From positions 310,001 through 374,000 of the IMG/VR virus record IMGVR_UViG_3300032315_001715: DNA of 64,000 nt, one strand, 5' to 3'. This document shows, piece after piece, positions 1 to 30,095 of the stretch. The stretch's first letter is position 1. Every line of letters begins with the position of its first letter. A program made the position numbers and the translations under genes. The notes below the pieces were generated by a model that worked only from the letters and a program-made list of their open reading frames with translations, did no database searches and was not told where the DNA came from.

Positions 1-174
1 GGCCTCAAACAGGATGGATCCAGGACGATCATCACCAAACCTCTCCCTGCACCATGCTCGCATGTCTCCGATCTGCGTCATGCGTTCCTTGGGGATCGAC
101 ACGCAATGTCCCAACACATATCGAATGAGATCTGGCCGGGAATACCCGGTGAAATCGTCCCGTTCGGTTTGCAT
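1..174 (-). CDS. hypothetical protein, partial (runs off left edge)
   Basis: ATG at 174 overlaps TGA of upstream gene (TGATG); open to base 1: MQTERDDFTGYSRPDLIRYVLGHCVSIPKERMTQIGDMRAWCRERFGDDRPG; not in ORF track. Confidence 0.55.
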   Translation of the reverse strand, partial: MQTERDDFTGYSRPDLIRYVLGHCVSIPKERMTQIGDMRAWCRERFGDDRPGSILFEA

Positions 175-1322
175 CACAGGAACCAGTGCGGTACCACGCG
201 GCTGCGATCACGAACGATCTCCCGATCATGATCACGAACGATCATGCCGGCGGATTTGTTACCTACCACCCAGCTACCAATCACCGCATGATTACCGTCC
301 TGCTTGAACAGGTTGGCACGCTGCTGATAGATCCTGCGGCCCTGGTAAATGCCATCGGTCTTGTCCACTACTTGCCCAGAGCTAACAATGTCAATGTTTG
401 CGCCCTCGCGGCTCAGCAGAGGCTTGGCAACGTAATCCGTGGTCATCTCCTCGGCGGTCCACTTGGCCGGCAGGATGTTGGGGTGGTCCGGGAACATCTC
501 ATGTAGGATTGGCAGGATGCCCTTGTTGCTAAGGATCATCTTCCAAACGGGCTCAACGATACCGCTGACGTCGTTGCGTGTATAGCTGCCGAAGTCATCG
601 TCCGTCATCCACTCCCAGGGATAGAGCTTGAACCAATACTTGATCTGACGATCCTCTAGGTCCACGAACTTGCCATCCAGCCAGCCGATCTTGGCAAGAT
701 CGATGAAATCCGTGTCCATGCCGGCCTGCGTGGCCAGGTCTTGTAGATACCGACAGGTTTGGCGCTCCTCCTCGTTTTCCTCGTAGCCAGCAAAGTAAAA
801 GCGCTCACCCGGGGTCATGATGGTGCGAAGCTCACCAAATCGTTCCTGTAGCTTTTCGTGCAGGCTGTTGAACTGATCGCAGCCCTTGTGGGTGTCCTGC
901 AACCAGAACCACTGCATCAGCGCGCTTTCAATCACCATAGTGGGCGTATCGGCGTTGTATTCCAGCATCTTGGGCAGCGACTTGCCATCGTAGGCAAAGT
1001 CAAAACGCCCATACAGGCTCGGATCCTGACGAGCCCAGCTCCACTGGATGTAATCGTGATAGAGCACGGGAATGCCCATCTTTTTCATGAGGTCGGTGTC
1101 CTTGAACACACGATCCACGGCTTCGATGCAGCGATCATGGCACTCTTCCGTGGCAGCTTCAAGCTCGTCCACTTCAGCAGCGGTGAACTCATAGGCCACG
1201 CTTTCGTCCCAATAGGTGCCATCGCCACCGTCGGCTGGCAATCCAGCCGTGTGGTAGGTAAACCCGATTTCTTCAGCCCGCTCGGTCCAATTAGCCCGAG
1301 GCTTAACCACATGTCGCTTCAT
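174..1322 (-). CDS. glutathionylspermidine synthase family ATP-grasp ligase (YjfC/YgiC-like)
   Basis: LYGRFDFAYDG, KMLEYNADTPT, FKLYPWEWM, KPLLSREGANI motifs; start moved to 1322 (AGGAG RBS, follows stop of upstream gene). Confidence 0.92.
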   Translation of the reverse strand: MKRHVVKPRANWTERAEEIGFTYHTAGLPADGGDGTYWDESVAYEFTAAEVDELEAATEECHDRCIEAVDRVFKDTDLMKKMGIPVLYHDYIQWSWARQDPSLYGRFDFAYDGKSLPKMLEYNADTPTMVIESALMQWFWLQDTHKGCDQFNSLHEKLQERFGELRTIMTPGERFYFAGYEENEEERQTCRYLQDLATQAGMDTDFIDLAKIGWLDGKFVDLEDRQIKYWFKLYPWEWMTDDDFGSYTRNDVSGIVEPVWKMILSNKGILPILHEMFPDHPNILPAKWTAEEMTTDYVAKPLLSREGANIDIVSSGQVVDKTDGIYQGRRIYQQRANLFKQDGNHAVIGSWVVGNKSAGMIVRDHDREIVRDRSRVVPHWFL

Positions 1323-1323
1323 G

Positions 1324-1941
1324 TTATGCTCCTGCTGCTCCCGAGCCTGCTCTGCCAAATCCACCACGTGCGGCTGCGCTCGGCGCTGCTACCGCTGCTC
1401 TACCTGCTGCAGGTGCGGGTGAACTGATGCCTGATCGCGCTGCACCTGAGCTCATACCGCTACCAAGGCTGCCAGAGGAGTAAGGAACGCCACCGCCGTG
1501 GAAGCTGCCGACAAACACCGCTGATCCGCCCGACCGTGTACCACCTGCTACCACCTGGCGACCGTCGCGTTCACGATCCGTGGCAGGATTTTGATATCCC
1601 TGCAGGTACACAGGCCTCGTGGTGTCTAATGCGCGGCCAACCATGAAACCGACCATGGCGGGAAGCCAAACGTCAGTTGAACCGGTGCTGACATTGTTGC
1701 AGCGCTCATGTCCGCGGTCCATGCAGGATTCCTGGCTGGAATATCGTGGACCAGTTGCGATGTGATTTCCAAGGGCTTGGGCATATCGTGTATCGCAATC
1801 AGTGCCGCCTGACGATCGACACTGTTCGATGGATTCATAAATGGCCTGTCCTTCTCGAGGGGTGTCGTCATTGCATGCCGCAAGGGCAACCGCACTGACA
1901 GTCCCAAGAAGTACCAAGGCAATCTGTCTTGAATGTTTCAT
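1324..1941 (-). CDS. DUF1190 family lipoprotein (YjfM/YgiB-like)
   Basis: Lipobox ALAAC, Cys pairs, WLPAMVGFMVG, Gly/Ser-rich tail ending RGGFG; adjacent to GSP synthase as in yjfMC. Confidence 0.85.
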   Translation of the reverse strand: MKHSRQIALVLLGTVSAVALAACNDDTPREGQAIYESIEQCRSSGGTDCDTRYAQALGNHIATGPRYSSQESCMDRGHERCNNVSTGSTDVWLPAMVGFMVGRALDTTRPVYLQGYQNPATDRERDGRQVVAGGTRSGGSAVFVGSFHGGGVPYSSGSLGSGMSSGAARSGISSPAPAAGRAAVAAPSAAARGGFGRAGSGAAGA

Positions 1942-2836: not shown

Positions 2837-3038
2837 TCCATCTGAGTATTGCTAGGGTGCGATCAAAATCACACATGGCAAAGTGCTCGGCTTGCTTTCT
2901 CAAATTTTGGTCATAAATCAGGCACAGCAACTCCGGTCGAGTCGTCTCGAGATTGCCGGCTACCTTGCTGTCGTAGACCGCATCAATTGCCCGACCTAGA
3001 TCATCATCTGACATGGCTAGCAGCCATCCATTAAGCAT
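2820..3038 (-). CDS. hypothetical protein
   Basis: TGATG coupling to ligase stop. Confidence 0.55.
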   Translation of the reverse strand: MLNGWLLAMSDDDLGRAIDAVYDSKVAGNLETTRPELLCLIYDQNLRKQAEHFAMCDFDRTLAILRWNDSHD

Positions 3039-4441
3039 CAGATCTTCTCCCCCGGTTCCCAGCCACGGAATTGCATGAACACCGGAAACCGCAGGCTCCA
3101 GCTATCGCCCTTTTGGCTCTTGGTTAGTGCATCTCCCTTGATTTCAACGATACGGCCCAAGACGGCGTTGCGATCAGCCCAGATCGCATCTCGCAGCTCT
3201 TCACTATAACCGCCGCCAACCGTTACCTCGACCAGCTTGCCTTGATCTGTGCCTCGGCAAATCAATCCGCCCAAAGTGTTGGCAAACTTGCTTTCAGGCT
3301 TGCCGGGTTCAAATCCAATCACTTCTAGATCAACGGTGATCCATGGCTTGATCTTTAGCCATGCATCGGTGCGCTTGGTTCGATATGTGGACGACGGGTC
3401 CTTGATCATCACGCCCTCATAGCCAGCCTCGATGGTCTCAGCGTTGAACTCCTTGAGGGCCTGTTGGCCTTCCTTGGTATTGAGATCAACCCTAAGCTTG
3501 GGTACCACGTAGATAGCACCGCTAGAAATCTCATCCAGTAATGGCTGGAATTCCACCAACGCTTCATGCCGTTGTGTTTGCGTAAGATTGCACTCTCCGG
3601 CAAGGAAATCCGCCATGGGTAAGCAATCAAACAGCGCGAGCTTGGCATCCTTGGTATCGGCCTTGCCCTTGCCTCGATTGAGCTGCTTCATCAGGGCCTG
3701 GAAGCTGCGGCTGGTCATCTCGCCGTCTAATACCATGCTACACTTGAGGCTAGGTAACAGCTTGGCTTGCATGGCTGCGATATGCTCAAAATTGGTGTTG
3801 ATGCGCCCTTCTCGAGTGTAGTGTGTGACCTCGTTGCGCTCCTTGTCGAGGAAGCTCAACACCCGCACACCGTCGAGCTTGATATCAATCAGCTTGGAGC
3901 CGATCATTTTCTTGGGATGGTCTTCGCCGTTCTTAGCCAACTGGCAGCTGAACTCCGGGATGATATAGGGTTCAGCTGCGGCGCCGTTTTTGCCCAAGAC
4001 CTTGTTGATGGTGCTGTCAGTGCAGCCGCATTTGAAATCCTTCAGCAAAACGCGGCGATAAAACCCGTTCCAATCCCGAACGTTGGCGGTATCAGATGCG
4101 GCACGCAATGCATCTCGAGCGGCATTGCCGCTGAGCTCACGGGTTTCTAGCTTGGCCGCGATCGCCTTGAAATCATTCCAGGTGAATGTGCTGGCTGGTT
4201 GTGGCGCATCGTCCTCATCGGTGATCAACGGGGCCTTTCGCACGCCATATGTGCGCAGCGCATCATACGCCATGAGAGCTCCTTCAAAGAACTCAATCAA
4301 TCCTGCATCCCAAGCTGCTTGGATGATGTGCTCCTTGTGACCACGAGCAGAGACCGATTCCAGCGCGTAGATTACATCGGCAGCGGTGAGCAGATTTAGC
4401 GAGGATGGATCAAAGTCGTCGTCGGAATGGGCATCGGCCAT
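3038..4441 (-). CDS. lig: ATP-dependent DNA ligase
   Basis: KLDGVR (motif I), LDGEM, EGVMIK, WLKIKP, C-terminal OB fold with SLRFPVF. Confidence 0.95.
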   Translation of the reverse strand: MADAHSDDDFDPSSLNLLTAADVIYALESVSARGHKEHIIQAAWDAGLIEFFEGALMAYDALRTYGVRKAPLITDEDDAPQPASTFTWNDFKAIAAKLETRELSGNAARDALRAASDTANVRDWNGFYRRVLLKDFKCGCTDSTINKVLGKNGAAAEPYIIPEFSCQLAKNGEDHPKKMIGSKLIDIKLDGVRVLSFLDKERNEVTHYTREGRINTNFEHIAAMQAKLLPSLKCSMVLDGEMTSRSFQALMKQLNRGKGKADTKDAKLALFDCLPMADFLAGECNLTQTQRHEALVEFQPLLDEISSGAIYVVPKLRVDLNTKEGQQALKEFNAETIEAGYEGVMIKDPSSTYRTKRTDAWLKIKPWITVDLEVIGFEPGKPESKFANTLGGLICRGTDQGKLVEVTVGGGYSEELRDAIWADRNAVLGRIVEIKGDALTKSQKGDSWSLRFPVFMQFRGWEPGEKI

Positions 4442-5090: not shown

Positions 5091-5960
5091 TTATCCTTTC
5101 CAGTCGGATGGAGGTTTGCATCCGCTGGCATCATATGCAGGAAATGGATTAGCCTGGTATGACACATCACGCTTCTTTCGAAGCCTGATGCCCATTTTCT
5201 CCAGGTTCTTGGCCGTGTTGTAATACATGGCCAGCACAGCATCCGGTTGGTTTGGATTAGCCCTGCTGAACTGCGTGGTCTGCGTTTGCCACGTCGTGGC
5301 ATTGCCGAATCCGGTGCCAACATCCTGTGTTACCGGGCTGCTGGTTAGGCTTTGCTGCATTGCGGCGCCGATGATGCCGCCACTGGTCTTGACCTCGGCA
5401 GAATTCATGGGCATTGCCGCAGCAGCAGATTTTACCATGCTGGCATTGATGCGCCGATCGCTTGATTCGGTTAACGCTGCGCCCACCCATGTGTTATTGA
5501 TGGATGATATCTGTGACCCGTAACCTATAAGTCCTCGCGTCATGTAGTAGTCTTCGTGCCGTGTTGGTTCGACATATTCCGAAAATACCATCGCACCAAT
5601 GACCCCGGTATTGGAAGTGCTGCCGCCTATGGCATTAACATAGCTGTCCCTGCTGCGGCTGAAGAAGAACTCCGCAGCTTCTTGGTTGCTGATCTTCCAC
5701 CCAGGAATGCTGATGGTATCCTGTGCATTGACAACGTATCCTTGGCTGCTTGGACCGGCAGGCTTGCCTTCCAGTATGTCAAGTCCGTCAACACTCAGTA
5801 TGAACAATGCACGCGATTGCGTGTTGTTCCTGATATCGATGGTATAGTTGTTGCCTTCCCTGCCTTCGATCCAGACAGCACCATTGTGATAGTATTCATC
5901 GGCAGGGGTCCGACCCCTAGGACGCACGATCATCTCGTAGCGCCTTGCGTTGTCTAGCAT
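5091..5960 (-). CDS. conserved hypothetical protein (vWA-associated)
   Basis: 289 aa; LSVDGLDI, GYVV, IPGW, GVIGAMVF, GTGFG motifs; directly downstream of vWA gene. Confidence 0.75.
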   Translation of the reverse strand: MLDNARRYEMIVRPRGRTPADEYYHNGAVWIEGREGNNYTIDIRNNTQSRALFILSVDGLDILEGKPAGPSSQGYVVNAQDTISIPGWKISNQEAAEFFFSRSRDSYVNAIGGSTSNTGVIGAMVFSEYVEPTRHEDYYMTRGLIGYGSQISSINNTWVGAALTESSDRRINASMVKSAAAAMPMNSAEVKTSGGIIGAAMQQSLTSSPVTQDVGTGFGNATTWQTQTTQFSRANPNQPDAVLAMYYNTAKNLEKMGIRLRKKRDVSYQANPFPAYDASGCKPPSDWKG

Positions 5961-5971
5961 GTTGCTGCTCC

Positions 5972-6736
5972 TTACTTCATCGACTTCAGTTCGTCGGTGG
6001 TGTAGAGACCAGTGCTGTAAAGCTCTGCCGTTGAAACGCCTGCTGACTTTGCCATGCGCATGCGCGAGGTGCTAGCACTGACCGAGGCCATCGTTGCACC
6101 CATGTTGGCGGTAGAGTAGTTAACGCTGTTCGCCGCGCTCATGCCAAACCTGCTACCAACGCTGAATGCGTCGATGTTGGCACCGAGGAACGTAAAGGTC
6201 CAGTCAGCCTTTTCGGCCGCAGCAACCATGTCCTTGATCTGTTGGTTGTTGAACCTGCGAGAACTGTTTTCCTCACCATCGGTCATTATGGTGATGATCA
6301 CACCGGGGCGGTCCTTCTTTTTGCTAGCAGCAAGCACCGCATTGACGCTGTTGATGGTTTCGCCAATGGCATCCAACAGATTGGTGCCGCCCGCTGGGGT
6401 ATAACCGGCATGATCAAGCATTGGAACTTCTGAAAGAGGTCGTCCTTGATAAACGGTATTAACCTTATAGCCTTCGAATTTCACCAACGTAAGATAACCA
6501 GCTCCGGCAGTTGCTTCAGCGGCCTTTTGCCCTTGGACGAATTCGTTGAATCCGACGATGGTGGTGTCTCGGCAGATCCCCATGCTGCCGCTTTCGTCAA
6601 GAACGATGGCGATCAAGGTACCGTTCTTGCCGGCCTTCTTGAACTTGATCGGATTTGATTGTGCATCGGGGGTTGAGATCTGGACTGCGGCATTAACATT
6701 GACGGCAAGGCCAGGAAAAGGATTTGGTAAGTTCAT
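5972..6736 (-). CDS. von Willebrand factor A domain protein
   Basis: MIDAS DESGSM, GGTNLLDAIG, IMTDGEENSS. Confidence 0.9.
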   Translation of the reverse strand: MNLPNPFPGLAVNVNAAVQISTPDAQSNPIKFKKAGKNGTLIAIVLDESGSMGICRDTTIVGFNEFVQGQKAAEATAGAGYLTLVKFEGYKVNTVYQGRPLSEVPMLDHAGYTPAGGTNLLDAIGETINSVNAVLAASKKKDRPGVIITIMTDGEENSSRRFNNQQIKDMVAAAEKADWTFTFLGANIDAFSVGSRFGMSAANSVNYSTANMGATMASVSASTSRMRMAKSAGVSTAELYSTGLYTTDELKSMK

Positions 6737-6745
6737 GTTTTACCT

Positions 6746-6816
6746 TCGAGGGCTTTACTGCCGAGAATCACCTCTCGGTCTTTCTGCCTCAGATATGTGA
6801 GCACCATTGCTCACAT
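6746..6816 (-). promoter_or_regulatory. structured 5' leader of vWA gene (two hairpins)
   Basis: TATGTGAGCA-N4-TGCTCACATA, then stem CCGAGA/TCTCGG with AGAAA/AGTAA internal loop. Confidence 0.45.
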
Positions 6817-6916
6817 AATATTATGCACAAATGTAGGTTAACTTTCAATAAATATTGATGCGATTCACGGGATGGCAGTCCCTAATCGCTCTATAACTTG
6901 ATAGGAGTTACAGCAA

Positions 6917-7058
6917 ATGGATGCTAATCCATATTTATCAAACAAGTATTCTAAATGGTATTATCAAATAGTTGATCAAGCATGATGGATTAAGAAAACA
7001 ATTTGCAACGGATCCCGGGGATGGTTGGATTTTAGGTAAGGGCAAAACCAAGATCTAA
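6917..7058 (+). pseudogene. internally deleted homing-endonuclease-like gene remnant
   Basis: AGGAG RBS + MDANPYLSNKYSKWYYQIVDQA* (6917-6985), then in another frame DGLRKQFATDPGDGWILGKGKTKI* (to 7058); these resemble N- and C-termini of phage HNH/NUMOD proteins. Confidence 0.55.
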
Positions 7059-7060
7059 GA

Positions 7061-7678
7061 TCAACCTATTGTTGGAAAAAGTATCTCATTCATGAATTCG
7101 TCTGCACGTTCGGTCCCAAGGAGATTGACCAATGCCTTGCGGGTATGTTCATTTCGACGCTGTTGTAGACAATATCTATTCTGTCCAGCAACGATCGCCG
7201 TACGATCTCCCAAGCTGCCCAGGGTTGGTAGATAATGGACCAGCACTCGAACGGCTTCGTCGCCGATCAACCGCATCTCGTCGGGCGACGGTCGACATGC
7301 TAGCCAGTGCGGAGAAAAGATGTCTCCCCAGTCGGGCCGTTCGCGTGCGCGACCAACATCGATTTCTAAAAAAGGGTTGGTCGGTGCCGCCACCGGACTG
7401 AGATCCATAAACACGCCGGTGATCTTGTTTTCACCGGCGATCACATCAAAACCGTAGATCGGTGACGGGTCGTTTGCATGGGGAAACACGCAGCAATGCA
7501 CCACGCAGAAACGATCTTGGTTGAAGATTTCGACATGTGCTAGCCTAAATCGAGGGCTGCGGAATCTATGGTTTTCCCAGCCATAATCCGGTGTTGGTAT
7601 TGGAACAGCACCATGCTGATGCTCAATGACCTTGAGCAATCGTCGAGCTATTATCTCGACGAGATCAATGCAGCTCAT
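7061..7678 (-). CDS. pcyA: ferredoxin-dependent bilin reductase, PcyA-like
   Basis: RLAHVE, VVHCCVFP, PIYGFDVI, MDLSP, PDWGDIFS, QNRYCLQQRRNEHT; start moved to 7678. Confidence 0.88.
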   Translation of the reverse strand: MSCIDLVEIIARRLLKVIEHQHGAVPIPTPDYGWENHRFRSPRFRLAHVEIFNQDRFCVVHCCVFPHANDPSPIYGFDVIAGENKITGVFMDLSPVAAPTNPFLEIDVGRARERPDWGDIFSPHWLACRPSPDEMRLIGDEAVRVLVHYLPTLGSLGDRTAIVAGQNRYCLQQRRNEHTRKALVNLLGTERADEFMNEILFPTIG

Positions 7679-8231
7679 AGAGCTCGTTATAGATCTTGAT
7701 GGAATATTCGAATGCTTTTTTGGCTTCGACCGCATCTCGATCCCAAACCATGTTTAGCACGGTTTTTCGAACATAATCAACACATGCTCGGGGATCTCGG
7801 AATTCAAGATGCTTTTTTGGGAGGAATTGCAGCTTCTTTGCAATCATCTGTCCGCCATATAACCAACCAAGATAATGTGTATAGATATGCCCGTTGAGTT
7901 GTCCATGTAGATGTGGAAGATAATGGGTATTCAGATACCTGGCATATTCCAATGTGGACGGGCATGCAGTGACGCTGCATGCAGGACCGTTGGCAATATC
8001 TTGAACCAGAAGATGTCGGCGATTGAGATCGCTTGGGAACTGCATCTTGGTTTCAATGGCATCGGCAATCAAATATAGCTGATAACAATAGTTCTTGTAG
8101 ATTAGAGGATCTATTGACGCGTTGAGCAAGTCCTGTGCAAGCCGAGTGTGCTCAGCTTGATCGTGTAGATCGGCGCACGAGCTGCGCAGGTCTTGTTGTG
8201 AGATAGATTCCATCCAAAATAATGTTTTCAT
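7665..8231 (-). CDS. heme oxygenase
   Basis: LHDQAE proximal His, HIYTHYLGWLYGGQMI, EAKKAFEY. Confidence 0.88.
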   Translation of the reverse strand: MKTLFWMESISQQDLRSSCADLHDQAEHTRLAQDLLNASIDPLIYKNYCYQLYLIADAIETKMQFPSDLNRRHLLVQDIANGPACSVTACPSTLEYARYLNTHYLPHLHGQLNGHIYTHYLGWLYGGQMIAKKLQFLPKKHLEFRDPRACVDYVRKTVLNMVWDRDAVEAKKAFEYSIKIYNELYELH

Positions 8232-8791
8232 TTCTTGGATAATTTCAAGTTCATTCTGTCAAGAATTTCCATTAAAGTGACCATGCGCTGATACTCTACC
8301 TTTTTGTAGCTTTCTGGTAGAGAATCCCAGTCCTTGCATGTTGGGCTGGTCTTGTCTCGATGGCTGTGTTTTTGTCCATATCGCCAACCTTCGTCGGTTC
8401 GTTTCCGCAACCAATGGTTATGGTTCATCTTAGCAGCTTCGAGAGCAATGGCCTTGACCAAATCCTCGGCTATCTCATTAGACCGAGTATCAGCCACCGG
8501 CTCTTGGCTCCAGTGTATGGTAAAATCACCGTCTGGGTTGCGATCACTATAGCTTTTAGCGATATCGGTTGCTTCCTCAGCGGTGAGATCCCTGGCGAGC
8601 ACCGCAACATAATGATTGGTTTTACCGTCCTTTCTTCGATAAAAAGATATCTGTCCGTCGGTTGGCATGGTTTCCGTTGAGGCTGAAATTCCGGGAGGAC
8701 CAGCGTCGCTAATGCAGCGAATCCAGCATATTAGCGATTCATCGGGCAATTCGTAATTAGTATCGAGGCAGATGTACGGATGGTTGAACAT
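8228..8791 (-). CDS. RyR-domain protein
   Basis: C-terminal NHNHWLRKRTDEGWRYG...KTSPTCKDWDSLPESYK matches the RyR repeat pattern. Confidence 0.75.
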   Translation of the reverse strand: MFNHPYICLDTNYELPDESLICWIRCISDAGPPGISASTETMPTDGQISFYRRKDGKTNHYVAVLARDLTAEEATDIAKSYSDRNPDGDFTIHWSQEPVADTRSNEIAEDLVKAIALEAAKMNHNHWLRKRTDEGWRYGQKHSHRDKTSPTCKDWDSLPESYKKVEYQRMVTLMEILDRMNLKLSKK

Positions 8792-8798
8792 CCTTTAT

Positions 8799-9431
8799 TT
8801 ACCAAGTGGTGCCGTCCCAGCCGACCCTTTTCCAAATATTGGTAATTCCGTCATATGTGCCTGAACACCAATAAAAATACCCAACGCTGAAAGCGATCTT
8901 GTTTAGCACGTCGCCCGGTTGCCCGACGGATGATGATGGCACCGATGCAACGAACACCGACGCTGGCCCGGTTGGCCCGGTTGGGCCACCGGGATTACCC
9001 CGTGGTCCGGTCGGCCCAAGAGAACCTGGTGTACCAGCTGGACCAGTAATGGCTGATCCTGTTAAGAAATGCACTATATCTATGGTAGCGTTTTCTATCG
9101 GTGCCGTGCTAAAGTTTATTTGATTGCCAATGATTGAATAGTTGGTCACTGCGGTCTGGACAAGACCATCAACGTTTACGATCATGTTGTAAACGCTAAC
9201 CGGAGTTAGGCTCATGGTAAATGTGGACGTTATACCGTTGCCTAAGAAGGTGTCAACCGTGAGTGCTGTTAAGAGAACTCCAGCCGGACCTTGTGACCCA
9301 GTTGGACCAGACGGTCCGGTTGGCCCAGTACGGCTCATGATCCATGCTTCTTGTGCTTCGCTGTATGTCCAGCTTCGGCTACCAAGGGAATATATCTGAC
9401 CGTCAGATGGACTCGAAGGAAATGCTGTCAT
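8799..9431 (-). CDS. collagen-like repeat virion/fibre protein
   Basis: GPT repeats, FPSSPSDGQIY N-terminus, TAAATA upstream. Confidence 0.7.
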   Translation of the reverse strand: MTAFPSSPSDGQIYSLGSRSWTYSEAQEAWIMSRTGPTGPSGPTGSQGPAGVLLTALTVDTFLGNGITSTFTMSLTPVSVYNMIVNVDGLVQTAVTNYSIIGNQINFSTAPIENATIDIVHFLTGSAITGPAGTPGSLGPTGPRGNPGGPTGPTGPASVFVASVPSSSVGQPGDVLNKIAFSVGYFYWCSGTYDGITNIWKRVGWDGTTW

Positions 9432-9481
9432 TGTGATCTATTTATTGGTTTTGCTACCACTAAATATCGTGTTCTATTAGC

Positions 9482-10300
9482 ATGGAGAAACATCTAATGA
9501 TGATGAGATTTTTGTTAGCAGCAATGCTAACAATGGCGGTAATACCTGTGGTCGCCGCACAACAGTTGCCCCCAAGGCAGCCAGCATTGTGCGCTGAGCA
9601 AGCACCTTACGGATTTCCTCAGGTTATGCGCCCAAATTCGTCGCTGATATGCAGAACCGCATATATTCTTCTTCATGATAACGATGCGCGTGTTGCACCG
9701 TGGGTAGCATACACGCTTACGGCTGAGAATGTGCTTGGATGTGAACCTCGGGTTAATGCGTTTTCTCCGGATCAAAGCCTGCATCGTGGACAGCGGGCAG
9801 AGTTGGTTGACTATGCGAACAGCGGTTTTGATACCGGGCACATGGCTAATAACGCTGATATGAGCTGGAATCAGCAGGTTGCTCGCGAAAGCTTCATACT
9901 CAGCAACATGGCCCCGCAGATACCAGCCCTCAATCGCGGGGCATGGAGACAGCTTGAATCAGCCATCAGGGGATGGGCGTTTAACAGCAATCATAGCTTG
10001 ACCATTTACACCGGATCGATATATGATCTAAACGGTCGCAGGATTGGGCCAAATGGGGTTGTCGTTCCTCGGGCATTTTACAAGATAGTGATTAATAACG
10101 CAACGCGCCAAAGCCTTGCATTTGTTTTTCCGCACCAAGATATCAACGATTTTCGAACCGTGCAATCTACGGTAGCCGATGTTGAAACTTTGTCAGGCAT
10201 TCGATTTTTCGTGCCAGATGACAAAGCGATTCGCCACGGTGTATGGCCGGTCGAAATGGCACCTCTGATGGCAGCTAGGCGAGCACGCTGTAGGAGTTGA
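9482..10300 (+). CDS. DNA/RNA non-specific endonuclease (NucA/EndA family) with signal peptide
   Basis: DTGHMA (DRGH-type), ESFILSNMAPQ, LNRGAWRQLE, VPRAFYKIV; hydrophobic N-terminus. Confidence 0.9.
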   Translation: MEKHLMMMRFLLAAMLTMAVIPVVAAQQLPPRQPALCAEQAPYGFPQVMRPNSSLICRTAYILLHDNDARVAPWVAYTLTAENVLGCEPRVNAFSPDQSLHRGQRAELVDYANSGFDTGHMANNADMSWNQQVARESFILSNMAPQIPALNRGAWRQLESAIRGWAFNSNHSLTIYTGSIYDLNGRRIGPNGVVVPRAFYKIVINNATRQSLAFVFPHQDINDFRTVQSTVADVETLSGIRFFVPDDKAIRHGVWPVEMAPLMAARRARCRS

Positions 10301-10325
10301 CCTTTTCGACGCCTTGTGATACGCT

Positions 10326-10802
10326 TTGATCATGTTGTATAGATCTCCAGACGCCCTTCCCTGGGTTTTCCAAGCCTCATCGATCTTCATCGCTGGAGGT
10401 ATCAGTGATTGCCCGGACTGGCAAACCGAACTGGTATCCATGATGGATACCGACAAGCATGACGTGGTTAATCCACGAAGGATTGGCGGGTTTGATAAGA
10501 CCGGGGCCACGGCCGAGGAGCAGATTAAATGGGAACATTCGGCACTTGCCCACGTGGAAAACTGCATCTTTTGGTTTCCAAAAGAAACACTGTGTCCTAT
10601 AACCCTGTTTGAGCTTGGAAAGATGCTTGAAAAGGCACGAAAGGATCCCATCATCAAGCTGGCTATCGGATGGCATCCCGAGTATGCCCGTGCGTTTGAT
10701 TTGCAGGTCCAGATTTCACTCATGGGCATGAAAAAGCAGATCATCCATGCTGCTCCCGGTTGGGACGAACTATGCAGTGTGATCAAGACAACCTGGGGCT
10801 AA
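10326..10802 (+). CDS. nucleoside 2-deoxyribosyltransferase-like protein
   Basis: IFIAGGI, DWQ, NPRR, EQIKWE, FWFP, CPITLFELG. Confidence 0.8.
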   Translation: MIMLYRSPDALPWVFQASSIFIAGGISDCPDWQTELVSMMDTDKHDVVNPRRIGGFDKTGATAEEQIKWEHSALAHVENCIFWFPKETLCPITLFELGKMLEKARKDPIIKLAIGWHPEYARAFDLQVQISLMGMKKQIIHAAPGWDELCSVIKTTWG

Positions 10803-11017
10803 CCGCCCGATGGGTTAACTGTCAATTCTATGGTAAAAATCGCTATTGGATCCATCATGCGAAACAATGGTGCGTGGAAAAGTTTGGAGAATCCTCCAAA
10901 TCTGGACAGTGGATCATGTATGTAACACCGGCTAAAATGACATACGACTCGGCACGAGTGGTGACTTTCTTTAAAAGTCAACAAGACATGGCGTGGTTCA
11001 ATCTAACATGGGATTGA
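10760..11017 (+). CDS. hypothetical protein (WCxExFG small-protein type)
   Basis: KQWCVEKFG...W, FFKSQQDMAWFNLTW; start uncertain. Confidence 0.6.
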   Translation: MGRTMQCDQDNLGLTARWVNCQFYGKNRYWIHHAKQWCVEKFGESSKSGQWIMYVTPAKMTYDSARVVTFFKSQQDMAWFNLTWD

Positions 11018-11042
11018 CACTCCGCTGATGATGTGTTAAATT
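11014..11042 (+). promoter_or_regulatory. sigma70-type promoter for tRNA pair
   Basis: TTGACA-N17-TAAATT just upstream of tRNA 1. Confidence 0.55.
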
Positions 11043-11050
11043 CACTAAAT

Positions 11051-11125
11051 GCTTTGCTGTGCTGGTGGACAGCCGGAGGCCTCTAAAACCTCGCAGTGAT
11101 GGTTCAATTCCGTCGCAGAGCACCA
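11051..11125 (+). tRNA. tRNA with CUA anticodon (amber suppressor-type), discriminator A73
   Basis: Acceptor GCTTTGC/GCAGAGC + ACCA; anticodon loop CT-CTA-AA (11083-11085); T arm GATGG-TTCAATT-CCGTC. Confidence 0.82.
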
Positions 11126-11130
11126 AGTTT

Positions 11131-11206
11131 GCTTCCATAGTTCAGTGGTCAGAACGGAGACCTCTAAATTCTCTTGTCGCAGGTTCGAATCCTGCTGGAA
11201 GCGCCA
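11131..11206 (+). tRNA. tRNA with CUA anticodon (amber suppressor-type), discriminator G73
   Basis: Acceptor GCTTCCA/TGGAAGC + GCCA; D arm GTTC/GAAC; loop CT-CTA-AA (11164-11166); T arm GCAGG-TTCGAAT-CCTGC. Confidence 0.9.
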
Positions 11207-11272
11207 ACATAAATAGGAACGATGATGAGCGAGCTGTAGAACCACCTTAAGACACACATCGATTTAACCTTG

Positions 11273-11304
11273 AACCTGCATGGCTTCTGTCATGCAGGTT
11301 TTTT
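11273..11304 (+). terminator. intrinsic terminator after tRNAs
   Basis: AACCTGCATGG-N6-TCATGCAGGTT followed by T run. Confidence 0.7.
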
Positions 11305-11332
11305 CTTGACCTCAAATCCAAAGGAGAAACAA

Positions 11333-11719
11333 ATGGAGGAAATACTCGAGGAAATACGCGGTATAGCACCGGGCTGGGCCGGGCCAACTACCAAAGCACC
11401 GAACCCTTGGATAGTGGAGAATTTTGAAACCATTATTGCAAGGCATCTTCATTCGGTTCGAAATCCTGATGAGATTGAAATTGATCCAGATGACGGTGCA
11501 ATAACGATTTACTGGTCCAGTCGTGAGCTCAAGCAAACCTTCTCATTATCGTTCCAGTCTAGAACAACGATCATTGGGGTTCTAACGGATCTTCACAATT
11601 ACACGGGATATCCACCGTGGCGACTGCCAATTGAGGATTTGGGATCCATACAAGAAAAGCTAAATCACCCCGCGGTTAAAATACTAACAACCATTGCTAA
11701 CCACAACAGGAGCGAATGA
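11333..11719 (+). CDS. hypothetical protein
   Basis: AAGGAG RBS before ATG 11333. Confidence 0.65.
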   Translation: MEEILEEIRGIAPGWAGPTTKAPNPWIVENFETIIARHLHSVRNPDEIEIDPDDGAITIYWSSRELKQTFSLSFQSRTTIIGVLTDLHNYTGYPPWRLPIEDLGSIQEKLNHPAVKILTTIANHNRSE

Positions 11720-12317: not shown

Positions 12318-13184
12318 ATGTTTACATCGCAAAATACAGTCATGAAACCAAAGATATTAACAGTAGGGCATGCTTGCCTAGATATCGTGCATACCGTCCA
12401 GCTGATACCAAAATCAAACACCAAGGTTGCTAGCGACAGGGTGCAGATACAGGTAGGGGGTAATGCGGCTAATGCTGCGGTTGCACTGTGTGATCTAGGA
12501 GCTAGTGCTGATCTATGTACGGTGCTTGGTCGGGATTCACACCCTTTCACCCGGATACTGTTAGCATTGCTAAAGGAACGATGCGTTGGCGTCAATTACT
12601 GTCGATTTGACGAGGTCCAGGATTGCCCGAATTCAACCATCATGGTATTGCCAAATGGTGAACGGGCTATCGTAAACTGGCAAGCAGATGAAATACGATC
12701 TGCCGTGTCAGCACCGGCATCTCTAGACCCATATCAAATGGTCATTGCCGATGCATATCGATTACCAATGATTCGACAGATATTTGCCCTGGCTCGAAGC
12801 AAGGGTGTGCCGACCATGCTTGATGTTGACGGAGTGTTACCTGACATTGGACTGCTACCTTCGGCTGACCATATATGGTTTAGCCAAGAAGCGTGGCGAT
12901 GCCAGCGGATATCATTATCGGATTTACAGGCTAGATTTGGAGGCATCGTTGGTGTAACCGACGGCGATCGTCCGGTAACCTGGATTGATCGAGATGGCAA
13001 GATACGATATCATCAGCCGCCCCAAGTTATTGCTAAAAATACGCTTGGGGCAGGCGACGTGTTTCGAGCTAGATTAGCTCTTGGGCTTTGCTTGAACGAA
13101 TCCGTCAAAGATGCGATTAATGCCGCTTGCATAACCGCAGGTGAGCACATTATCGAACAACCGCTAACTAGGACCATCCAATGA
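12318..13184 (+). CDS. PfkB family carbohydrate kinase
   Basis: GGNAANAAVAL, NTLGAGDVF. Confidence 0.9.
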   Translation: MFTSQNTVMKPKILTVGHACLDIVHTVQLIPKSNTKVASDRVQIQVGGNAANAAVALCDLGASADLCTVLGRDSHPFTRILLALLKERCVGVNYCRFDEVQDCPNSTIMVLPNGERAIVNWQADEIRSAVSAPASLDPYQMVIADAYRLPMIRQIFALARSKGVPTMLDVDGVLPDIGLLPSADHIWFSQEAWRCQRISLSDLQARFGGIVGVTDGDRPVTWIDRDGKIRYHQPPQVIAKNTLGAGDVFRARLALGLCLNESVKDAINAACITAGEHIIEQPLTRTIQ

Positions 13185-14032
13185 AAACCCTAACCAGCAA
13201 CGTTGATTCCAGCGTAAATTTCATCGAAAAGGAATTAACTGGGTTCATCGAAAGCCGATATGTCAGGCGGCGTCGAGAATATTTCATTGCGTATCTCAGC
13301 AGCCAGACCGGTTGCAATCGAGGATGCAAGATGTGCCATCTCACCGCTACTAAGCAAACGCAATCCACAAATTGTGATCTGCAGGATTTTGTTGATCAGC
13401 TTGAAACAGTGTTTGCACACTACGACAAGGATTTACCTGCCGATTACATCCATGTAAACTGGATGGCTAGGGGAGAACCACTGGCTAATCCTACTGTTAC
13501 AGAGACTGGCACCGAATTGCTGATTAGATTGGGACAAATGGCTAGATCCAGGAATCTGCCTATCAAGTTCAATGTATCTACCATCATGCCGTTGACCATG
13601 AGAAAATCGTTGGTTGAGGTCTTCCCCGTGATAACACCGACCATTTATTATAGCATCTATTCGGCTAACCAGGACTTCCGTAACAAGTGGTTACCCGGAG
13701 CAATGCCGATTGATCGATCACTGAAAATGCTGGCCGAATATCAAAGATTCAGCAAAAAGATCATCAAATTTCACGGCGCGTTTATCAAGGACGAAAATGA
13801 TCGAGAAAAAGATGTATTAAATATGCTCACAGCCATACAACAGCACGGCATAGTTGGGGAATTCAACATCGTGAGATACAATCCATTTAGCGATGATCAG
13901 GGTGTTGAAAGTCCGTATCTAAAGCAGATCATGCAGTTGATCGCCGAGCGCATGCCATGCAAGATCATCCCTAGGGTTGGCGAGGATGTTTATGCCAGCT
14001 GCGGAACGTTTGTCGGAGAGGGTACCATTTGA
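13181..14032 (+). CDS. RlmN/Cfr-like radical SAM protein (divergent)
   Basis: SSQTGCNRGCKMC (CxxxCxxC), MARGEP (cf. MGMGEP), C-terminal ASCG. Confidence 0.8.
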   Translation: MKTLTSNVDSSVNFIEKELTGFIESRYVRRRREYFIAYLSSQTGCNRGCKMCHLTATKQTQSTNCDLQDFVDQLETVFAHYDKDLPADYIHVNWMARGEPLANPTVTETGTELLIRLGQMARSRNLPIKFNVSTIMPLTMRKSLVEVFPVITPTIYYSIYSANQDFRNKWLPGAMPIDRSLKMLAEYQRFSKKIIKFHGAFIKDENDREKDVLNMLTAIQQHGIVGEFNIVRYNPFSDDQGVESPYLKQIMQLIAERMPCKIIPRVGEDVYASCGTFVGEGTI

Positions 14033-22756: not shown

Positions 22757-24151
22757 TTATTTCACAACAATGGTTTTGCAAAGTTGATAAAATTGCGCAA
22801 GCTCGGGGAATGTACTGATGAAGTTGGTACCTCTCCTCTTGTCGTGCTCATCAACAAATACTGCAAAGTCTCTTCTAGCGGCATTGATGCTGATGTTTTC
22901 ATTTCGATGGGGCGGAGCCTTGGTAAAGTTTATTAGCCGCTCGAGGTGTAGGATTTCATAGTGCATGAAATGTCCGGCCTTGGAAGTATCAGTGTTGGCC
23001 TTCATGAACTCCATTGCAGGATCAAGATCATTTTTATGCTCGTTGGTTAATATCGAAAGGCACTGATGATGTGGGTATCGCAGGATGGATATGTCGAGGC
23101 TTAGTCTGGTAGTACCATGCTTGGCCTTCAACCCCAGCAGATCAGATAACAGCGTGGTATATGTGGTGATGCTAAACACGTTGGCGGTGCTCATTATGGT
23201 CACGCGACAATCTGGTATTTCGGTTAAAAATTGATCTATCGTTGCGTACCATCTCTTATAATCAAGACCAAACCTTCCATATTCTGCTGCCGCTCCGGCA
23301 GCATCGACGCTGGTAAACAGATTAAAGCTCTTGATCTTTTTTTCGACTATTAGATGCTTCACCTTCTCCATGAATGGGTTAAGCTTTGAATCCGGTACAC
23401 ATGCATTGGTGTTTACAGCAAGCTCGAGCTGTGGTTGTGGACGTTCACTTAGGAAATCCAACACCTTGAAAGTATCATTGGCCAGCAGCGGCTCACCACC
23501 TGTTATGCGGAAGATTCGCAAATCCTTGACCAATGAGGGCCACCAATCCCAGAACGCTTCAACATAGGGATTATGCTCCTTGTGATGTATCGGCATTTCC
23601 TTGTTAGCTCGATACCACTCGAGATTATTAAATTTGCCGGAAGTTGGATACGGTCCGTGGTGTTCTATTTCTTCGGTCCAACGGCTTGAATAGACCGGAG
23701 AACAATACGAACACTTGAAATTGCAAATGTTGCTGAAGCTTACTTCTACATATGATGGGTTGATGTTACGCTCGGGAACATTATTGACGATTTCTCCCAT
23801 GCGATCGGCGCTCCATGGAGCAGCTGACTTGGCTACGCGATCGGAAAAGAATTCGTCCTTGTCGTAGTTTGGTAGATCCTCGACATTCCAGCAATACTGG
23901 CATTCGGTCGGTCTTTTGCCGTCGATCATGTCTTTTCTTTGCTGTTTTTTGAACTGTGTGTTGTGCAGGGCAGATGGGTCCTTTGCAAGCTCGTCAAGTG
24001 GTACCAGATGTGTTCTCGGGTGGTGGCAGCTATGGGTCCGTCCATTGTGGAGATGAAGGGTTACTTGGGTCCATTTTGCCGCACAAAAGCTAGGGCTCAC
24101 GTTGTTTAAGTCCTTCTTAACCTCTGCATATGCATCTTTTGGGTCTCTCAT
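22757..24151 (-). CDS. radical SAM protein with N-terminal Cys-rich (twitch-like) domain
   Basis: FCAAKW...SCHHP...CQYCW; CNFKCSYC; ITGGEP. Confidence 0.85.
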   Translation of the reverse strand: MRDPKDAYAEVKKDLNNVSPSFCAAKWTQVTLHLHNGRTHSCHHPRTHLVPLDELAKDPSALHNTQFKKQQRKDMIDGKRPTECQYCWNVEDLPNYDKDEFFSDRVAKSAAPWSADRMGEIVNNVPERNINPSYVEVSFSNICNFKCSYCSPVYSSRWTEEIEHHGPYPTSGKFNNLEWYRANKEMPIHHKEHNPYVEAFWDWWPSLVKDLRIFRITGGEPLLANDTFKVLDFLSERPQPQLELAVNTNACVPDSKLNPFMEKVKHLIVEKKIKSFNLFTSVDAAGAAAEYGRFGLDYKRWYATIDQFLTEIPDCRVTIMSTANVFSITTYTTLLSDLLGLKAKHGTTRLSLDISILRYPHHQCLSILTNEHKNDLDPAMEFMKANTDTSKAGHFMHYEILHLERLINFTKAPPHRNENISINAARRDFAVFVDEHDKRRGTNFISTFPELAQFYQLCKTIVVK

Positions 24152-24282
24152 GGATTTCTTACCTGTTCAATAAATTTAGTATATGATACTGGCCTAGACG
24201 GACGATCGTCAATGTTCCTCTGATTGACCATCCGTAATGATCAACGTTAACATGCTTTTAACGTCTAGGAGCGCAGAATGAT

Positions 24283-26734: not shown

Positions 26735-27313
26735 ATGGTAAACATTTTTCTCGTCAGCGACACTCACTTCGGTCATAAGAACATCTGTCTGTTCAACGGA
26801 CCGGACGGAAGTCCACTGCGTCCATGGGATGATCCCGATGAGATGGACGAGGCCATGGTCGAAAGATGGAACGGTGTGGTTAAACCAAATGACGTGGTTT
26901 ATCACCTCGGTGACGTGGTGATGAACCGCCGATGTCTTGCTACCGTTGCCCGGCTCAACGGAGACAAACGGCTAATACTCGGTAATCACGATATTTTTGA
27001 TCACAGCGACTATCTCGTGCATTTCAAACGGTTGCACGGTAGTTACAAGCTGGACAACTTCCTGCTAACCCATATACCGGTGCATATTGACTCAGTTGCC
27101 CATTGGACTGAATGTAACATCCACGGGCATGTACATGCCCACGATATTCCCAGTGGCAAGTATTTCAACGTCAGCGTGGAAATGATCGGCTACACGCCGA
27201 TTAGCCTTGAGGATGCTAGGGTTCGAATCAGGGAAAAGCAGGAAAAATATAAGGTTGACATGCAGCAGAATGATGCTAATTTGCCAATTGAAAATAGGAG
27301 AACTGCCGAGTGA
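26735..27313 (+). CDS. calcineurin-like metallophosphoesterase
   Basis: SDTHFGH, LGD, GNHD, THIP, HGHVH. Confidence 0.9.
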   Translation: MVNIFLVSDTHFGHKNICLFNGPDGSPLRPWDDPDEMDEAMVERWNGVVKPNDVVYHLGDVVMNRRCLATVARLNGDKRLILGNHDIFDHSDYLVHFKRLHGSYKLDNFLLTHIPVHIDSVAHWTECNIHGHVHAHDIPSGKYFNVSVEMIGYTPISLEDARVRIREKQEKYKVDMQQNDANLPIENRRTAE

Positions 27314-29425: not shown

Positions 29426-29500
29426 GTCATTATTTACCGATTATTGACCCGAGTTAATAACTACCAATATAATTCGATATCCATTATAGGGGGTAACAGC

Positions 29501-30078: not shown

Positions 30079-30095
30079 AGCGTATTTATGCCATG

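What the first reader, a model, noticed from the sequence alone, without database searches (positions are those of the whole stretch)
7061..8801. RyR-domain / heme oxygenase / PcyA-like bilin operon under a late-type promoter
Seen: three overlap-coupled genes with TAAATA at 8796-8801 and no photosynthesis or phytochrome gene in the window. The reductase keeps residues matching PcyA Glu76 (HVE), His88 (VVHC) and Asp105 (GFDV). Established: HO + PcyA makes phycocyanobilin; HO + bilin reductase pairs (PcyX) are known from phages presumed to infect alphaproteobacteria. Inference: the bilin may feed host photoreceptors, act as antioxidant or signal, or bind the RyR protein. The RyR linkage looks unusual.
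Basis: partly seen in the sequence, partly recalled or inferred. Interest (0 to 1): 0.62.

Follow-up and report, generated by a model that had tools for sequence, protein, structure and literature searches.

The report
Giant-phage bilin cassette behind RyR gene
A 453-kb T4-type phage carries a heme oxygenase plus PcyA-like bilin reductase cassette that was inserted once behind an older RyR-domain gene and shares its promoter, so the RyR link looks historical, not a new bilin partner.

Summary
The three minus-strand genes are real. They encode a RyR-domain protein (8228-8791), a heme oxygenase (7665-8231) and a compact 205-aa ferredoxin-dependent bilin reductase (7061-7678). The reductase keeps the equivalents of PcyA Glu76, His88 and Asp105, so phycocyanobilin is the likeliest product.

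TAAATA at 8801-8796 is not chance. It is a genome-wide upstream signal: 95 genes carry it against 6.6 expected. All 13 distinct RyR-bearing relatives keep it 4-5 nt before the RyR start codon.

The RyR linkage is conserved, but only in one subclade of the reductase family.
- HO-FDBR is the universal mobile pair (81 of 81 loci).
- It occurs without any RyR gene in complete 250-270 kb phage genomes and in bacteria.
- The RyR gene has full-length orthologues next to DNA ligase in the isolated giant phages Phosso and Atu_ph07, which lack the cassette.
- On the reductase tree the RyR state needs only three changes.

A 2026 preprint shows that phage RyR-domain proteins bind or cleave Thoeris cADPR signals. 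That is the likeliest role here.

Verdict: a known bilin cassette, a new compact clade in giant T4-type phages, co-transcribed by descent with a probable counter-defence gene. Interest is moderate.

The parts
8796..8801 (-). TAAATA promoter-like element. It overlaps the TAA stop of the upstream gene and lies 4 nt before the RyR ATG, a leaderless-type arrangement.
   Evidence: Sequence read. Genome-wide enrichment: 95 genes with the motif within 60 nt upstream against 6.6 expected. Spacing to the start codon peaks at 4-5 nt. TAAATA-N4-5-ATG is kept in 13 of 13 distinct RyR-bearing relatives although the upstream genes differ.
8228..8791 (-). Two-domain protein (187 aa): an N-terminal ferredoxin-like beta-alpha-beta-beta-alpha-beta domain (about residues 1-98) and a C-terminal single RyR repeat (about 103-186). 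It is a probable nucleotide-signal binder of the RyDEP kind.
   Evidence: Pfam RyR E 1.1e-10. AlphaFold model pLDDT 86.9. Z 10.4 to the Bacteroides RyR-repeat protein 3NRT. H124 is invariant, W127 and E166 nearly so, across 34 homologues. Full-length orthologues occur in Atu_ph07 and Phosso.
7665..8231 (-). Short canonical heme oxygenase (188 aa).
   Evidence: Pfam PF01126 E 5.9e-12. Alignment to human HO-2 places H23 on the proximal heme-ligand histidine and keeps the glycine-rich distal-helix motif. It lies immediately upstream of the reductase in 81 of 81 loci with upstream sequence.
7061..7678 (-). Compact ferredoxin-dependent bilin reductase (205 aa) with the PcyA-type Glu/His/Asp triad (E50, H61, D78).
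   Evidence: Pfam PF05996 E 5.3e-21. Alignment to PcyA 2D1E/2G18 and PcyX 5OWG. H61 and D78 are invariant and E50 nearly invariant. Model pLDDT 93.6, pTM 0.90. TM 0.84 to Nostoc PcyA against 0.71 to PcyX.
6737..7060 (-). 324-nt non-coding gap after the reductase. It is the probable end of the transcription unit. A further TAAATA lies at 6937-6932.
   Evidence: ORF list, motif map. No terminator-like hairpin lies in the gap, and the scan of 5800-10400 found no more terminator-like sites than its shuffles did. No Rfam match.

Best explanation
The window lies in a 452,799-bp T4-type giant phage. Its major capsid protein is 82% identical to that of Sinorhizobium phage Phosso.

On the minus strand a conserved TAAATA element sits 4 nt before an ATG. 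It most likely starts a leaderless-type, late-style transcript covering three genes.

Genes 2 and 3 are the mobile two-gene bilin cassette found in many aquatic phages. The heme oxygenase opens host heme to biliverdin IX-alpha, releasing iron and CO. The 205-aa reductase then reduces biliverdin with host ferredoxin, since the phage encodes none. Because it keeps the PcyA-specific glutamate together with the His/Asp pair, the product is most likely phycocyanobilin and not the phycoerythrobilin made by PcyX.

Gene 1 is a backbone gene of this phage lineage. It encodes a ferredoxin-like domain plus one RyR repeat. It most likely binds, or possibly cleaves, an adenine-nucleotide signal such as Thoeris 2'/3'cADPR, as shown for phage RyR-domain proteins (RyDEP).

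The cassette landed once between this gene and the downstream VWA-like and ligase genes, and it now rides on the RyR gene's promoter. The linkage is therefore co-transcription by descent, not evidence that the RyR protein handles bilin.

Shown here: gene identities, residues, folds, motif enrichment, and the distribution of the linkage.

Inferred: the product, the electron donor, the transcript start and timing, and the ligand of the RyR protein.
For: Identities and residues.

Folds:
- Reductase model TM 0.84 to PcyA.
- RyR repeat Z 10.4 to 3NRT, with a generic ferredoxin-like N-domain.

Glu76 logic:
- Glu76 is PcyA-specific and needed for 18-vinyl reduction. It is absent from PcyX and pre-PcyA (PMC10151467).
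- The reductase of freshwater phage CB_2 lacks the PcyX Asp55 and makes PCB (PMC11480375).
- In my alignment and tree the PcyX-type loci, including pelagiphage Mosig, carry Asp. The window's clade carries Glu.

Cassette mobility:
- HO lies directly upstream of the reductase in 81 of 81 loci.
- RyR is present in only 13 of 79 scorable tree rows, all in one subclade, with 3 state changes.
- Complete 253-kb and 271-kb phage genomes with the cassette have no RyR domain at all.
- L046-L048 and L025 carry the cassette in other genome neighbourhoods. L045 lacks RyR at the same site. L029 has an opposite-strand gene between RyR and HO.

RyR as a backbone gene:
- Profile matches of E 4e-32 and 5e-26 to full-length proteins of Atu_ph07 and Phosso, next to DNA ligase.
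- Neither phage matches HO or the reductase.
- Capsid kinship with Phosso.

RyDEP function: PMC13232231.

Promoter. In RyR-less relatives L047 and L048 the same TAAATA-N5-ATG sits directly before HO.
Against: - No enzyme assay exists. Product regiospecificity in this family has surprised before (PcyX, pre-PcyA).
- Three close relatives carry Gln at the Glu76 position.
- The triad RyR-HO-FDBR persists while RyR diverges to 31-36% identity and the upstream neighbours change. Some would read that as selection for the linkage.
- The RyDEP phosphate-contact histidine is Ser149 here, and the acid is Glu, not Asp.
- I could not obtain the RyDEP sequence. The residue mapping rests on the spacing of the HxxW...HP...D motif in the Bacteroides/human RyR alignment.
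- A late-type promoter is an unusual place for a counter-defence gene.
- No RNA data were found.
- The host is unknown.
Confidence: 0.6

Rival explanations
1. The RyR-domain protein is a functional part of the bilin module. It would be a bilin or heme carrier, a sensor that couples a nucleotide signal to bilin synthesis, or a regulator or scaffold of the two enzymes.
For: - Tight packing and probable co-transcription from one conserved start signal.
- The triad is kept in 13 distinct relatives while RyR identity falls to 31-36% and the upstream genes vary.
- The N-terminal ferredoxin-like (ACT-like) fold is a common small-ligand-binding fold.
Against: - One evolutionary origin only.
- The full two-domain orthologue exists in Phosso and Atu_ph07 without HO or the reductase.
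- The cassette exists without any RyR domain in complete phage genomes and in bacteria.
- RyR was lost or separated in L045, L025 and L029.
- Characterised phage RyR-domain proteins act on cADPR signals (PMC13232231).
Confidence: 0.15
2. The reductase is not a phycocyanobilin synthase. It makes phycoerythrobilin (as PcyX does) or stops at phytochromobilin or a dihydrobiliverdin.
For: - The protein sits in the large phage clade that also holds PcyX, not inside cyanobacterial PcyA.
- It is 40 residues shorter than PcyA, with shortened loops.
- Pre-PcyA enzymes make 3E-phytochromobilin or PEB (PMC13446030).
- Three near relatives carry Gln at the Glu76 site.
Against: - Glu, His and Asp are all present, and the His and Asp are invariant.
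- The PcyX hallmark Asp and its three-residue insertion are absent.
- The only assayed freshwater phage enzyme that lacks Asp55 makes PCB (PMC11480375).
- The model is closer to PcyA than to PcyX.
Confidence: 0.3
3. The three genes are not one transcription unit. On this view TAAATA at 8801-8796 is only the stop-codon context of the upstream gene, and the genes are read through from the tail-fibre-like gene or from other promoters.
For: - The TAA of the motif is the stop codon of gene 8799-9431, which has its own TAAATA 7 nt before its ATG.
- Only 4 nt are left for a leader.
- The sigma-70 promoter and terminator scans are at chance level.
- No RNA runs were found.
Against: - Only 11 of 102 motif sites within 60 nt of a gene start are stop codons.
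- Spacing of 4-5 nt is the main peak genome-wide, with 30 genes at 8 nt or less.
- All 13 distinct relatives keep the motif at the same distance although their upstream genes differ, and often no upstream stop codon is involved.
Confidence: 0.12

Closest known systems
vHemO-vPcyA of freshwater phage CB_2 (Wegner et al. 2024, PMC11480375)
   Same: A phage-borne, overlapping HO + PcyA/X-type reductase pair in a large freshwater phage thought to infect a non-cyanobacterial host. The reductase lacks the PcyX Asp55. The CB_2 enzyme is shown to make PCB.
   Different: CB_2 carries a third gene, ALA synthase. This genome has none. No RyR gene is reported there.
PhiHemO-PcyX cassette of marine phages (PDB 5OWG; pelagiphage Mosig MT647606)
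   Same: The same two-gene architecture with overlapping genes. It is the best isolate match of the reductase (30.7% identity). Both belong to the same large phage clade.
   Different: PcyX has Asp in place of Glu76 plus a three-residue insertion, and it makes PEB. It forms a separate clade (SH-aLRT 99). There is no RyR neighbour.
PcyA of cyanobacteria, cyanophages and alphaproteobacteria (EC 1.3.7.5; 2D1E, 2G18)
   Same: The Glu76/His88/Asp105 equivalents and the fold (TM 0.84). The nearest bacterial relatives are Falsiroseomonas, Roseomonas and other Acetobacteraceae, at 32-39% identity and with HO upstream.
   Different: Only about 25% identity to cyanobacterial PcyA. The protein is 205 aa against about 248, lacking the N-terminal extension and with shortened loops. 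No phycobiliprotein, phytochrome or ferredoxin gene is in the genome.
RyDEP, phage RyR-domain defence-evasion proteins (Lopez Rivera et al. 2026 preprint, PMC13232231)
   Same: A phage protein with a single RyR (R12-type) repeat. The His and Trp of the HxxW ligand motif and a downstream acidic residue are conserved. The genome also carries NAD+ reconstitution genes (NAMPT and NMNAT-NUDIX).
   Different: It has an extra N-terminal ferredoxin-like domain. Ser replaces the phosphate-contact histidine and Glu replaces the catalytic Asp. It is not embedded in an NAD+ pathway operon, which lies 43 kb away. It was not assayed, and the RyDEP sequence itself was not available for alignment.
T4 and cyanomyovirus late promoters (TATAAATA / NATAAATA)
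   Same: The same TAAATA core. The genome is T4-type (gp23-type capsid). The motif precedes tail-fibre-like and holin-like genes.
   Different: A large class of sites lies only 4-5 nt from the start codon, which implies leaderless or nearly leaderless messages. The recognising factor and the timing were not tested.

Membership tests
Ferredoxin-dependent bilin reductase (Pfam PF05996) | Profile match above the curated cut-off, and the FDBR alpha/beta/alpha sandwich fold | tested here: met
   75.8 bits against a cut-off of 31. Model pLDDT 93.6. TM 0.84 to PcyA and 0.64-0.77 to PcyX, PebA, PebB, PebS and HY2.
PcyA (phycocyanobilin:ferredoxin oxidoreductase) | Glu76, His88 and Asp105 equivalents | tested here: met
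   E50, H61 and D78 align to them. H61 and D78 are invariant and E50 is 90% or more conserved in 21 family members.
PcyA (phycocyanobilin:ferredoxin oxidoreductase) | Placement inside a PcyA clade | tested here: inconclusive
   The protein falls in a phage clade (SH-aLRT 85) that also contains PcyX. The order of this clade relative to alphaproteobacterial and cyanophage PcyA is unresolved, and the PebS outgroup branch is long.
PcyA (phycocyanobilin:ferredoxin oxidoreductase) | Four-electron reduction of biliverdin to phycocyanobilin | not testable with these tools
   This needs co-expression with HPLC or a phytochrome assembly assay.
PcyX (phage PEB synthase) | Asp55 at the Glu76 position, and membership of the PcyX clade | tested here: not met
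   The window has Glu and lacks the three-residue insertion. The DHD-type sequences, including Mosig, form a separate clade.
Canonical heme oxygenase (Pfam PF01126) | Profile match, proximal histidine and glycine-rich distal helix | tested here: met
   46.3 bits against a cut-off of 23, covering profile positions 5-141 of 204. H23 aligns to the HO-2 proximal His and the G-x-x-x-GG motif is kept. A second short C-terminal stretch also aligns.
RyR repeat domain (Pfam PF02026) | Profile match and the two-helix plus hairpin repeat fold | tested here: met
   42 bits against a cut-off of 27.4. Z 10.4, rmsd 2.9 over 79 residues to 3NRT.
RyDEP (cADPR-degrading or -sequestering phage RyR proteins) | Ligand and catalytic residues H75, W78, H100 and D117 | tested here: inconclusive
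   By motif spacing they map to H124, W127, S149 and E166. Two are kept, one is conservatively changed and one is replaced. Relatives L039 and L044 do have His at the third site. The RyDEP sequence itself was not obtained.
RyDEP (cADPR-degrading or -sequestering phage RyR proteins) | Binding or cleavage of 2'cADPR/3'cADPR, and rescue from Thoeris | not testable with these tools
   Needs EMSA, TLC and phage challenge assays as in PMC13232231.
T4-type late promoter | TATAAATA-like -10 element enriched upstream of genes | tested here: met
   TAAATA is present before 95 genes against 6.6 expected. The consensus is (G/A)(A/G)TAAATA-N-C. The site here reads GGTAAATA, which is 6 of 8 to the T4 consensus.
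T4-type late promoter | Late timing and a gp55-type factor | not tested
   No RNA data. A gp55 homologue was not searched for.

The most novel reading that the evidence does not exclude
The RyR-domain protein and the bilin cassette form one functional late-expressed module in a lineage of giant phages. One version: the RyR/ferredoxin-like protein senses or sequesters a host nucleotide alarm signal, while heme breakdown to phycocyanobilin removes heme or supplies a bilin effector. Another version: the protein itself binds the bilin. Either would be the first non-photosynthetic, defence-linked use of a phage bilin pathway.
Probability: 0.12. Interest if true: 0.8.

Novelty: new variant of a known kind. 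Interest (0 to 1): 0.42.

Why it matters
Why phages of non-phototrophs carry heme oxygenase and bilin reductase genes is an open question; the authors of the 2024 study say they can only speculate. This locus adds three things.

- It defines a large, compact (about 205 aa) PcyA-like clade. At least 301 protein clusters were found, on contigs up to 519 kb, in giant T4-type phages whose nearest cultured kin infect rhizobia. That gives cultivable relatives in which to look for function.
- It shows that the eye-catching RyR neighbour is most simply an inherited promoter-sharing arrangement. This saves effort on a bilin-RyR hypothesis while pointing to a testable anti-Thoeris role.
- It reveals a conserved TAAATA-N4-5-ATG arrangement that suggests widespread leaderless late messages in these phages.

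Tried and rejected
- DNA-level search of the phage collection found nothing.
A narrower one (A3) worked.
- The 440-kb record behind L025 is not held. I could not check whether that phage keeps RyR beside its ligase.
- ALA synthase was absent from G000 and from five other cassette-bearing records. The CB_2 group could therefore not be identified on my tree.
- AmoC/PmoC gave no match, but the control search found nothing anywhere, so that negative is uninformative.
- Mycobacteriophage DyoEdafos (RyDEP) did not appear among the 60 listed of 137 tblastn hits.
- The sigma-70 promoter and intrinsic-terminator scans were at chance level.
- Rfam found only a tRNA in 6500-11500.
- Sequencing-run search found only DNA holders and no RNA.
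- The ESM Atlas feature search of the RyR N-domain gave no usable hit.
- I considered the N-terminal half to be a degenerate second RyR repeat and rejected that. The model gives a beta-alpha-beta-beta-alpha-beta fold with only generic ACT-like or ribosomal-protein matches, Z 7.2 or less.
- I considered TAG recoding because of the two tRNA(CUA) genes. The split-ORF test shows no clear signal, and all three genes here end in TGA.
- Complex prediction and the large representative search were not run. My conclusion claims neither binding nor absence of relatives.
Full report
WHAT IS THERE

Three co-directional ORFs lie on the minus strand. All three score above the Pfam gathering cut-offs.
- 8228-8791 (187 aa): RyR PF02026, E 1.1e-10, residues 101-184.
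- 7665-8231 (188 aa): Heme_oxygenase PF01126, E 5.9e-12.
- 7061-7735 as the longest ORF: Fe_bilin_red PF05996, E 5.3e-21.

Every homologue of the reductase begins at the methionine encoded by ATG 7678. The real product is therefore 205 aa, and its start overlaps the HO stop by 14 nt.

The RyR stop overlaps the first HO ATG as ATGA. A second ATG lies 18 nt further on, and relatives leave 4-10 nt between the two genes. All three genes end in TGA.

The gene upstream (8799-9431) is a collagen-like, tail-fibre-like protein.

THE GENOME

The window is bases 310,001-374,000 of a 452,799-bp IMG/VR virus record that CheckV estimates as complete.
- It has a gp23-type major capsid protein, 82% identical to that of Sinorhizobium phage Phosso (469 kb). 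The next-nearest are PA5oct- and GAP32-type giant phages.
- It carries 43 tRNA genes.
- The whole record has no match to psbA/psbD, phycobiliproteins, the phytochrome PHY domain, plant-type ferredoxin or ALA synthase.

It is therefore a giant T4-type phage, not a typical cyanophage. The host is unknown. Kinship with rhizobial phages and the alphaproteobacterial affinity of the reductase hint at Alphaproteobacteria, no more than that.

THE REDUCTASE

HMMER alignment to solved structures gives PcyA of Nostoc (E 7e-22), PcyX (4e-20) and PcyA of Synechocystis (6e-19). It places E50, H61 and D78 on Glu76, His88 and Asp105.

In 21 diverse family members H61 and D78 are invariant and E50 is nearly so. 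Two of the 21 carry Gln.

The AlphaFold model is confident (pLDDT 93.6, pTM 0.90). It superposes best on PcyA (TM 0.84), then PcyX (0.71), then PebA, PebB, PebS and HY2.

The literature gives the basis for reading the glutamate.
- Glu76 is specific to PcyA, is required for 18-vinyl reduction, and is absent from PcyX and pre-PcyA (PMC10151467).
- The reductase of freshwater phage CB_2, which lacks the PcyX Asp55, was shown to make phycocyanobilin (PMC11480375).
- In my alignment the PcyX-type phage sequences, including pelagiphage Mosig, carry Asp and a three-residue insertion. The window's clade, two other phage groups, cyanophage PcyA and alphaproteobacterial PcyA carry Glu.

I therefore predict phycocyanobilin with moderate confidence. 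Pre-PcyA enzymes and PcyX show how plastic this family is (PMC13446030).

The family is large. At least 301 clusters at 90% identity were found, on contigs up to 519 kb.

THE HEME OXYGENASE

The protein is short but keeps the proximal histidine (H23, aligned to the HO-2 ligand) and the glycine-rich distal-helix motif.

An HO gene lies directly upstream of the reductase, usually overlapping it, in all 81 loci that have upstream sequence. These span phage loci at 33-100% reductase identity and 15 bacterial or MAG loci. HO-FDBR is the unit that moves.

THE RyR PROTEIN

The model (pLDDT 86.9) has two domains.
- Residues 103-186 form a single RyR repeat (Z 10.4 to the Bacteroides protein 3NRT, 8.6 to human RyR3).
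- Residues 1-98 form a beta-alpha-beta-beta-alpha-beta ferredoxin-like domain. It has only generic matches (Z 7.2 or less) and also occurs as stand-alone proteins of about 100 aa in phages.

[quoted passage not shown] It names the ligand residues H75, W78, H100 and D117, which are conserved in RyR R12 domains (PMC13232231).

By motif spacing in the alignment to the Bacteroides/human repeat, these map to H124, W127, S149 and E166. H124 is invariant, and W127 and E166 are nearly invariant, in 34 homologues. Position 149 is Ser, Thr or Asn in most, and His in two distant relatives. I could not obtain the RyDEP sequence itself, so this mapping is an inference.

The genome also carries a NAMPT plus NMNAT-NUDIX pair for NAD+ reconstitution, 43 kb away.

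IS THE RyR LINKAGE MEANINGFUL?

For the linkage:
- RyR-HO-FDBR is kept in 13 distinct related contigs.
- Over these contigs RyR identity falls to 31-49%, HO to 30-57% and the reductase to 57-69%, while the upstream neighbours differ.

Against the linkage:
- (i) On the reductase tree the RyR-positive rows form one subclade of the window's family. The state needs only three changes among 13 positive and 66 negative rows.
- (ii) The basal members L046-L048 and L025 carry HO-FDBR in other genome regions without RyR. L045 has the same site without RyR. L029 has an opposite-strand gene between RyR and HO.
- (iii) None of the 50-odd distant phage loci and none of the 16 bacterial or MAG loci matches the window's RyR-family profile. 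A Pfam RyR search of three of those phage records also found no RyR domain anywhere. Two of these are complete cassette-bearing genomes of 253 and 271 kb.
- (iv) A profile of the window's RyR family matches full-length proteins of Atu_ph07 (E 4e-32) and Phosso (E 5e-26). In both phages the gene lies just upstream of DNA ligase. The window's block ends in the same ligase (3038-4441), and neither phage has HO or the reductase.

The simplest history is that the cassette was inserted once between a backbone RyR gene and the ligase region.

THE PROMOTER

TAAATA is far from random in this genome.
- There are 198 sites on both strands.
- 95 genes have one within 60 nt upstream, against 6.6 expected.
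- Spacing to the start codon has two peaks, at 4-5 nt (30 genes at 8 nt or less) and at 21-32 nt.
- Only 11 of the 102 sites within 60 nt of a gene start are stop codons.
- The motif precedes tail-fibre-like and holin-like genes in the window.

Every one of the 13 distinct RyR-bearing relatives has TAAATA 4-5 nt before the RyR ATG. The intervening bases vary and show no conserved Shine-Dalgarno sequence. None of them has the motif before HO. In the RyR-less relatives L047 and L048 the same arrangement sits directly before HO.

RyR-HO-FDBR therefore looks like one unit, started by a T4- or cyanomyovirus-like late-type element and probably giving a leaderless message. Timing and the transcript start are not shown, because no RNA run holds this sequence.

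VERDICT

The RyR link is real but best explained by descent and promoter sharing. The RyR protein is most likely a nucleotide-signal binder of the RyDEP kind.

This is a new compact clade and a new operon arrangement of known parts, and its interest is moderate.

A functional RyR-bilin coupling is not excluded. I give the rival explanation about 0.15 and the broader novel reading 0.12. It would be notable if true.

Noticed in passing
window 11051-11125 and 11131-11206 (+): Two adjacent tRNA genes with a CUA anticodon (amber-suppressor type). ARAGORN labels them 'Pyl'. Rfam confirms the second as a tRNA. A split-ORF test across the 453-kb genome gives no clear sign of TAG recoding: same-frame continuation after TAG in 14 of 98 cases, TAA in 24 of 206, TGA in 17 of 225.
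   Followed up: partly
whole genome; examples in window at 29431-29436, 30083-30088, 32965-32970, 9439-9444 (all -): TAAATA followed by 4-5 nt (up to 8) and then the start codon occurs at 30 genes. This suggests a class of leaderless or nearly leaderless messages. A second class has 21-32 nt spacing.
   Followed up: partly
window 51466-52563 and 52996-54387 (+): A bifunctional NMNAT (cytidylyltransferase-like) plus NUDIX protein lies next to a nicotinamide phosphoribosyltransferase. This looks like an NAD+ reconstitution pair of the kind phages use against NAD-depleting defences.
   Followed up: partly
window 27310-28767 (+): A full-length sigma-70-type factor with regions 1.2, the non-essential region, 2, 3 and 4, encoded by the phage.
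   Followed up: no
window 5972-6736 and 5091-5960 (-): A VWA-like protein (phrog_7371, E 2e-49; Pfam VWA only E 0.006) and an unknown 289-aa protein travel with HO-FDBR in relatives, also where RyR is missing (L045). Cyanophage P-SSM4 has pcyA next to cobS. A chelatase-like link to tetrapyrroles was not examined.
   Followed up: no
loci L028, L029, L032 (relatives): Three close relatives carry Gln at the Glu76-equivalent position of the reductase. This could change the product, given that PcyA Glu76 is needed for 18-vinyl reduction.
   Followed up: no
window 9482-10300 and 10326-10802 (+): Divergent from the operon lie a DNA/RNA non-specific endonuclease with a hydrophobic N-terminus that looks like a signal peptide, and then a nucleoside 2-deoxyribosyltransferase-like protein.
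   Followed up: no
window 174-1367 and 1324-1941 (-): A glutathionylspermidine synthase-like protein (E 1e-136) and a DUF1190 protein, an unusual pair for a phage.
   Followed up: no
window 12318-14032, 22757-25776: A PfkB-family kinase, two radical-SAM-like proteins and a Nol-type carbamoyltransferase. These may form a nucleoside- or sugar-modification set.
   Followed up: no
G000 bases 1-100 and 452700-452799 (outside the window): Both ends of the record lie in collagen-like GXY-coding repeats. The 'linear' record probably broke inside a repetitive fibre gene, not at a true genome end.
   Followed up: no
P0001 residues 1-98 (window 8498-8791, -): The N-terminal ferredoxin-like domain of the RyR protein also exists as stand-alone proteins of about 95-101 aa in phage-only ESM Atlas clusters (TM 0.75 by the match). 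Its function is unknown.
   Followed up: partly
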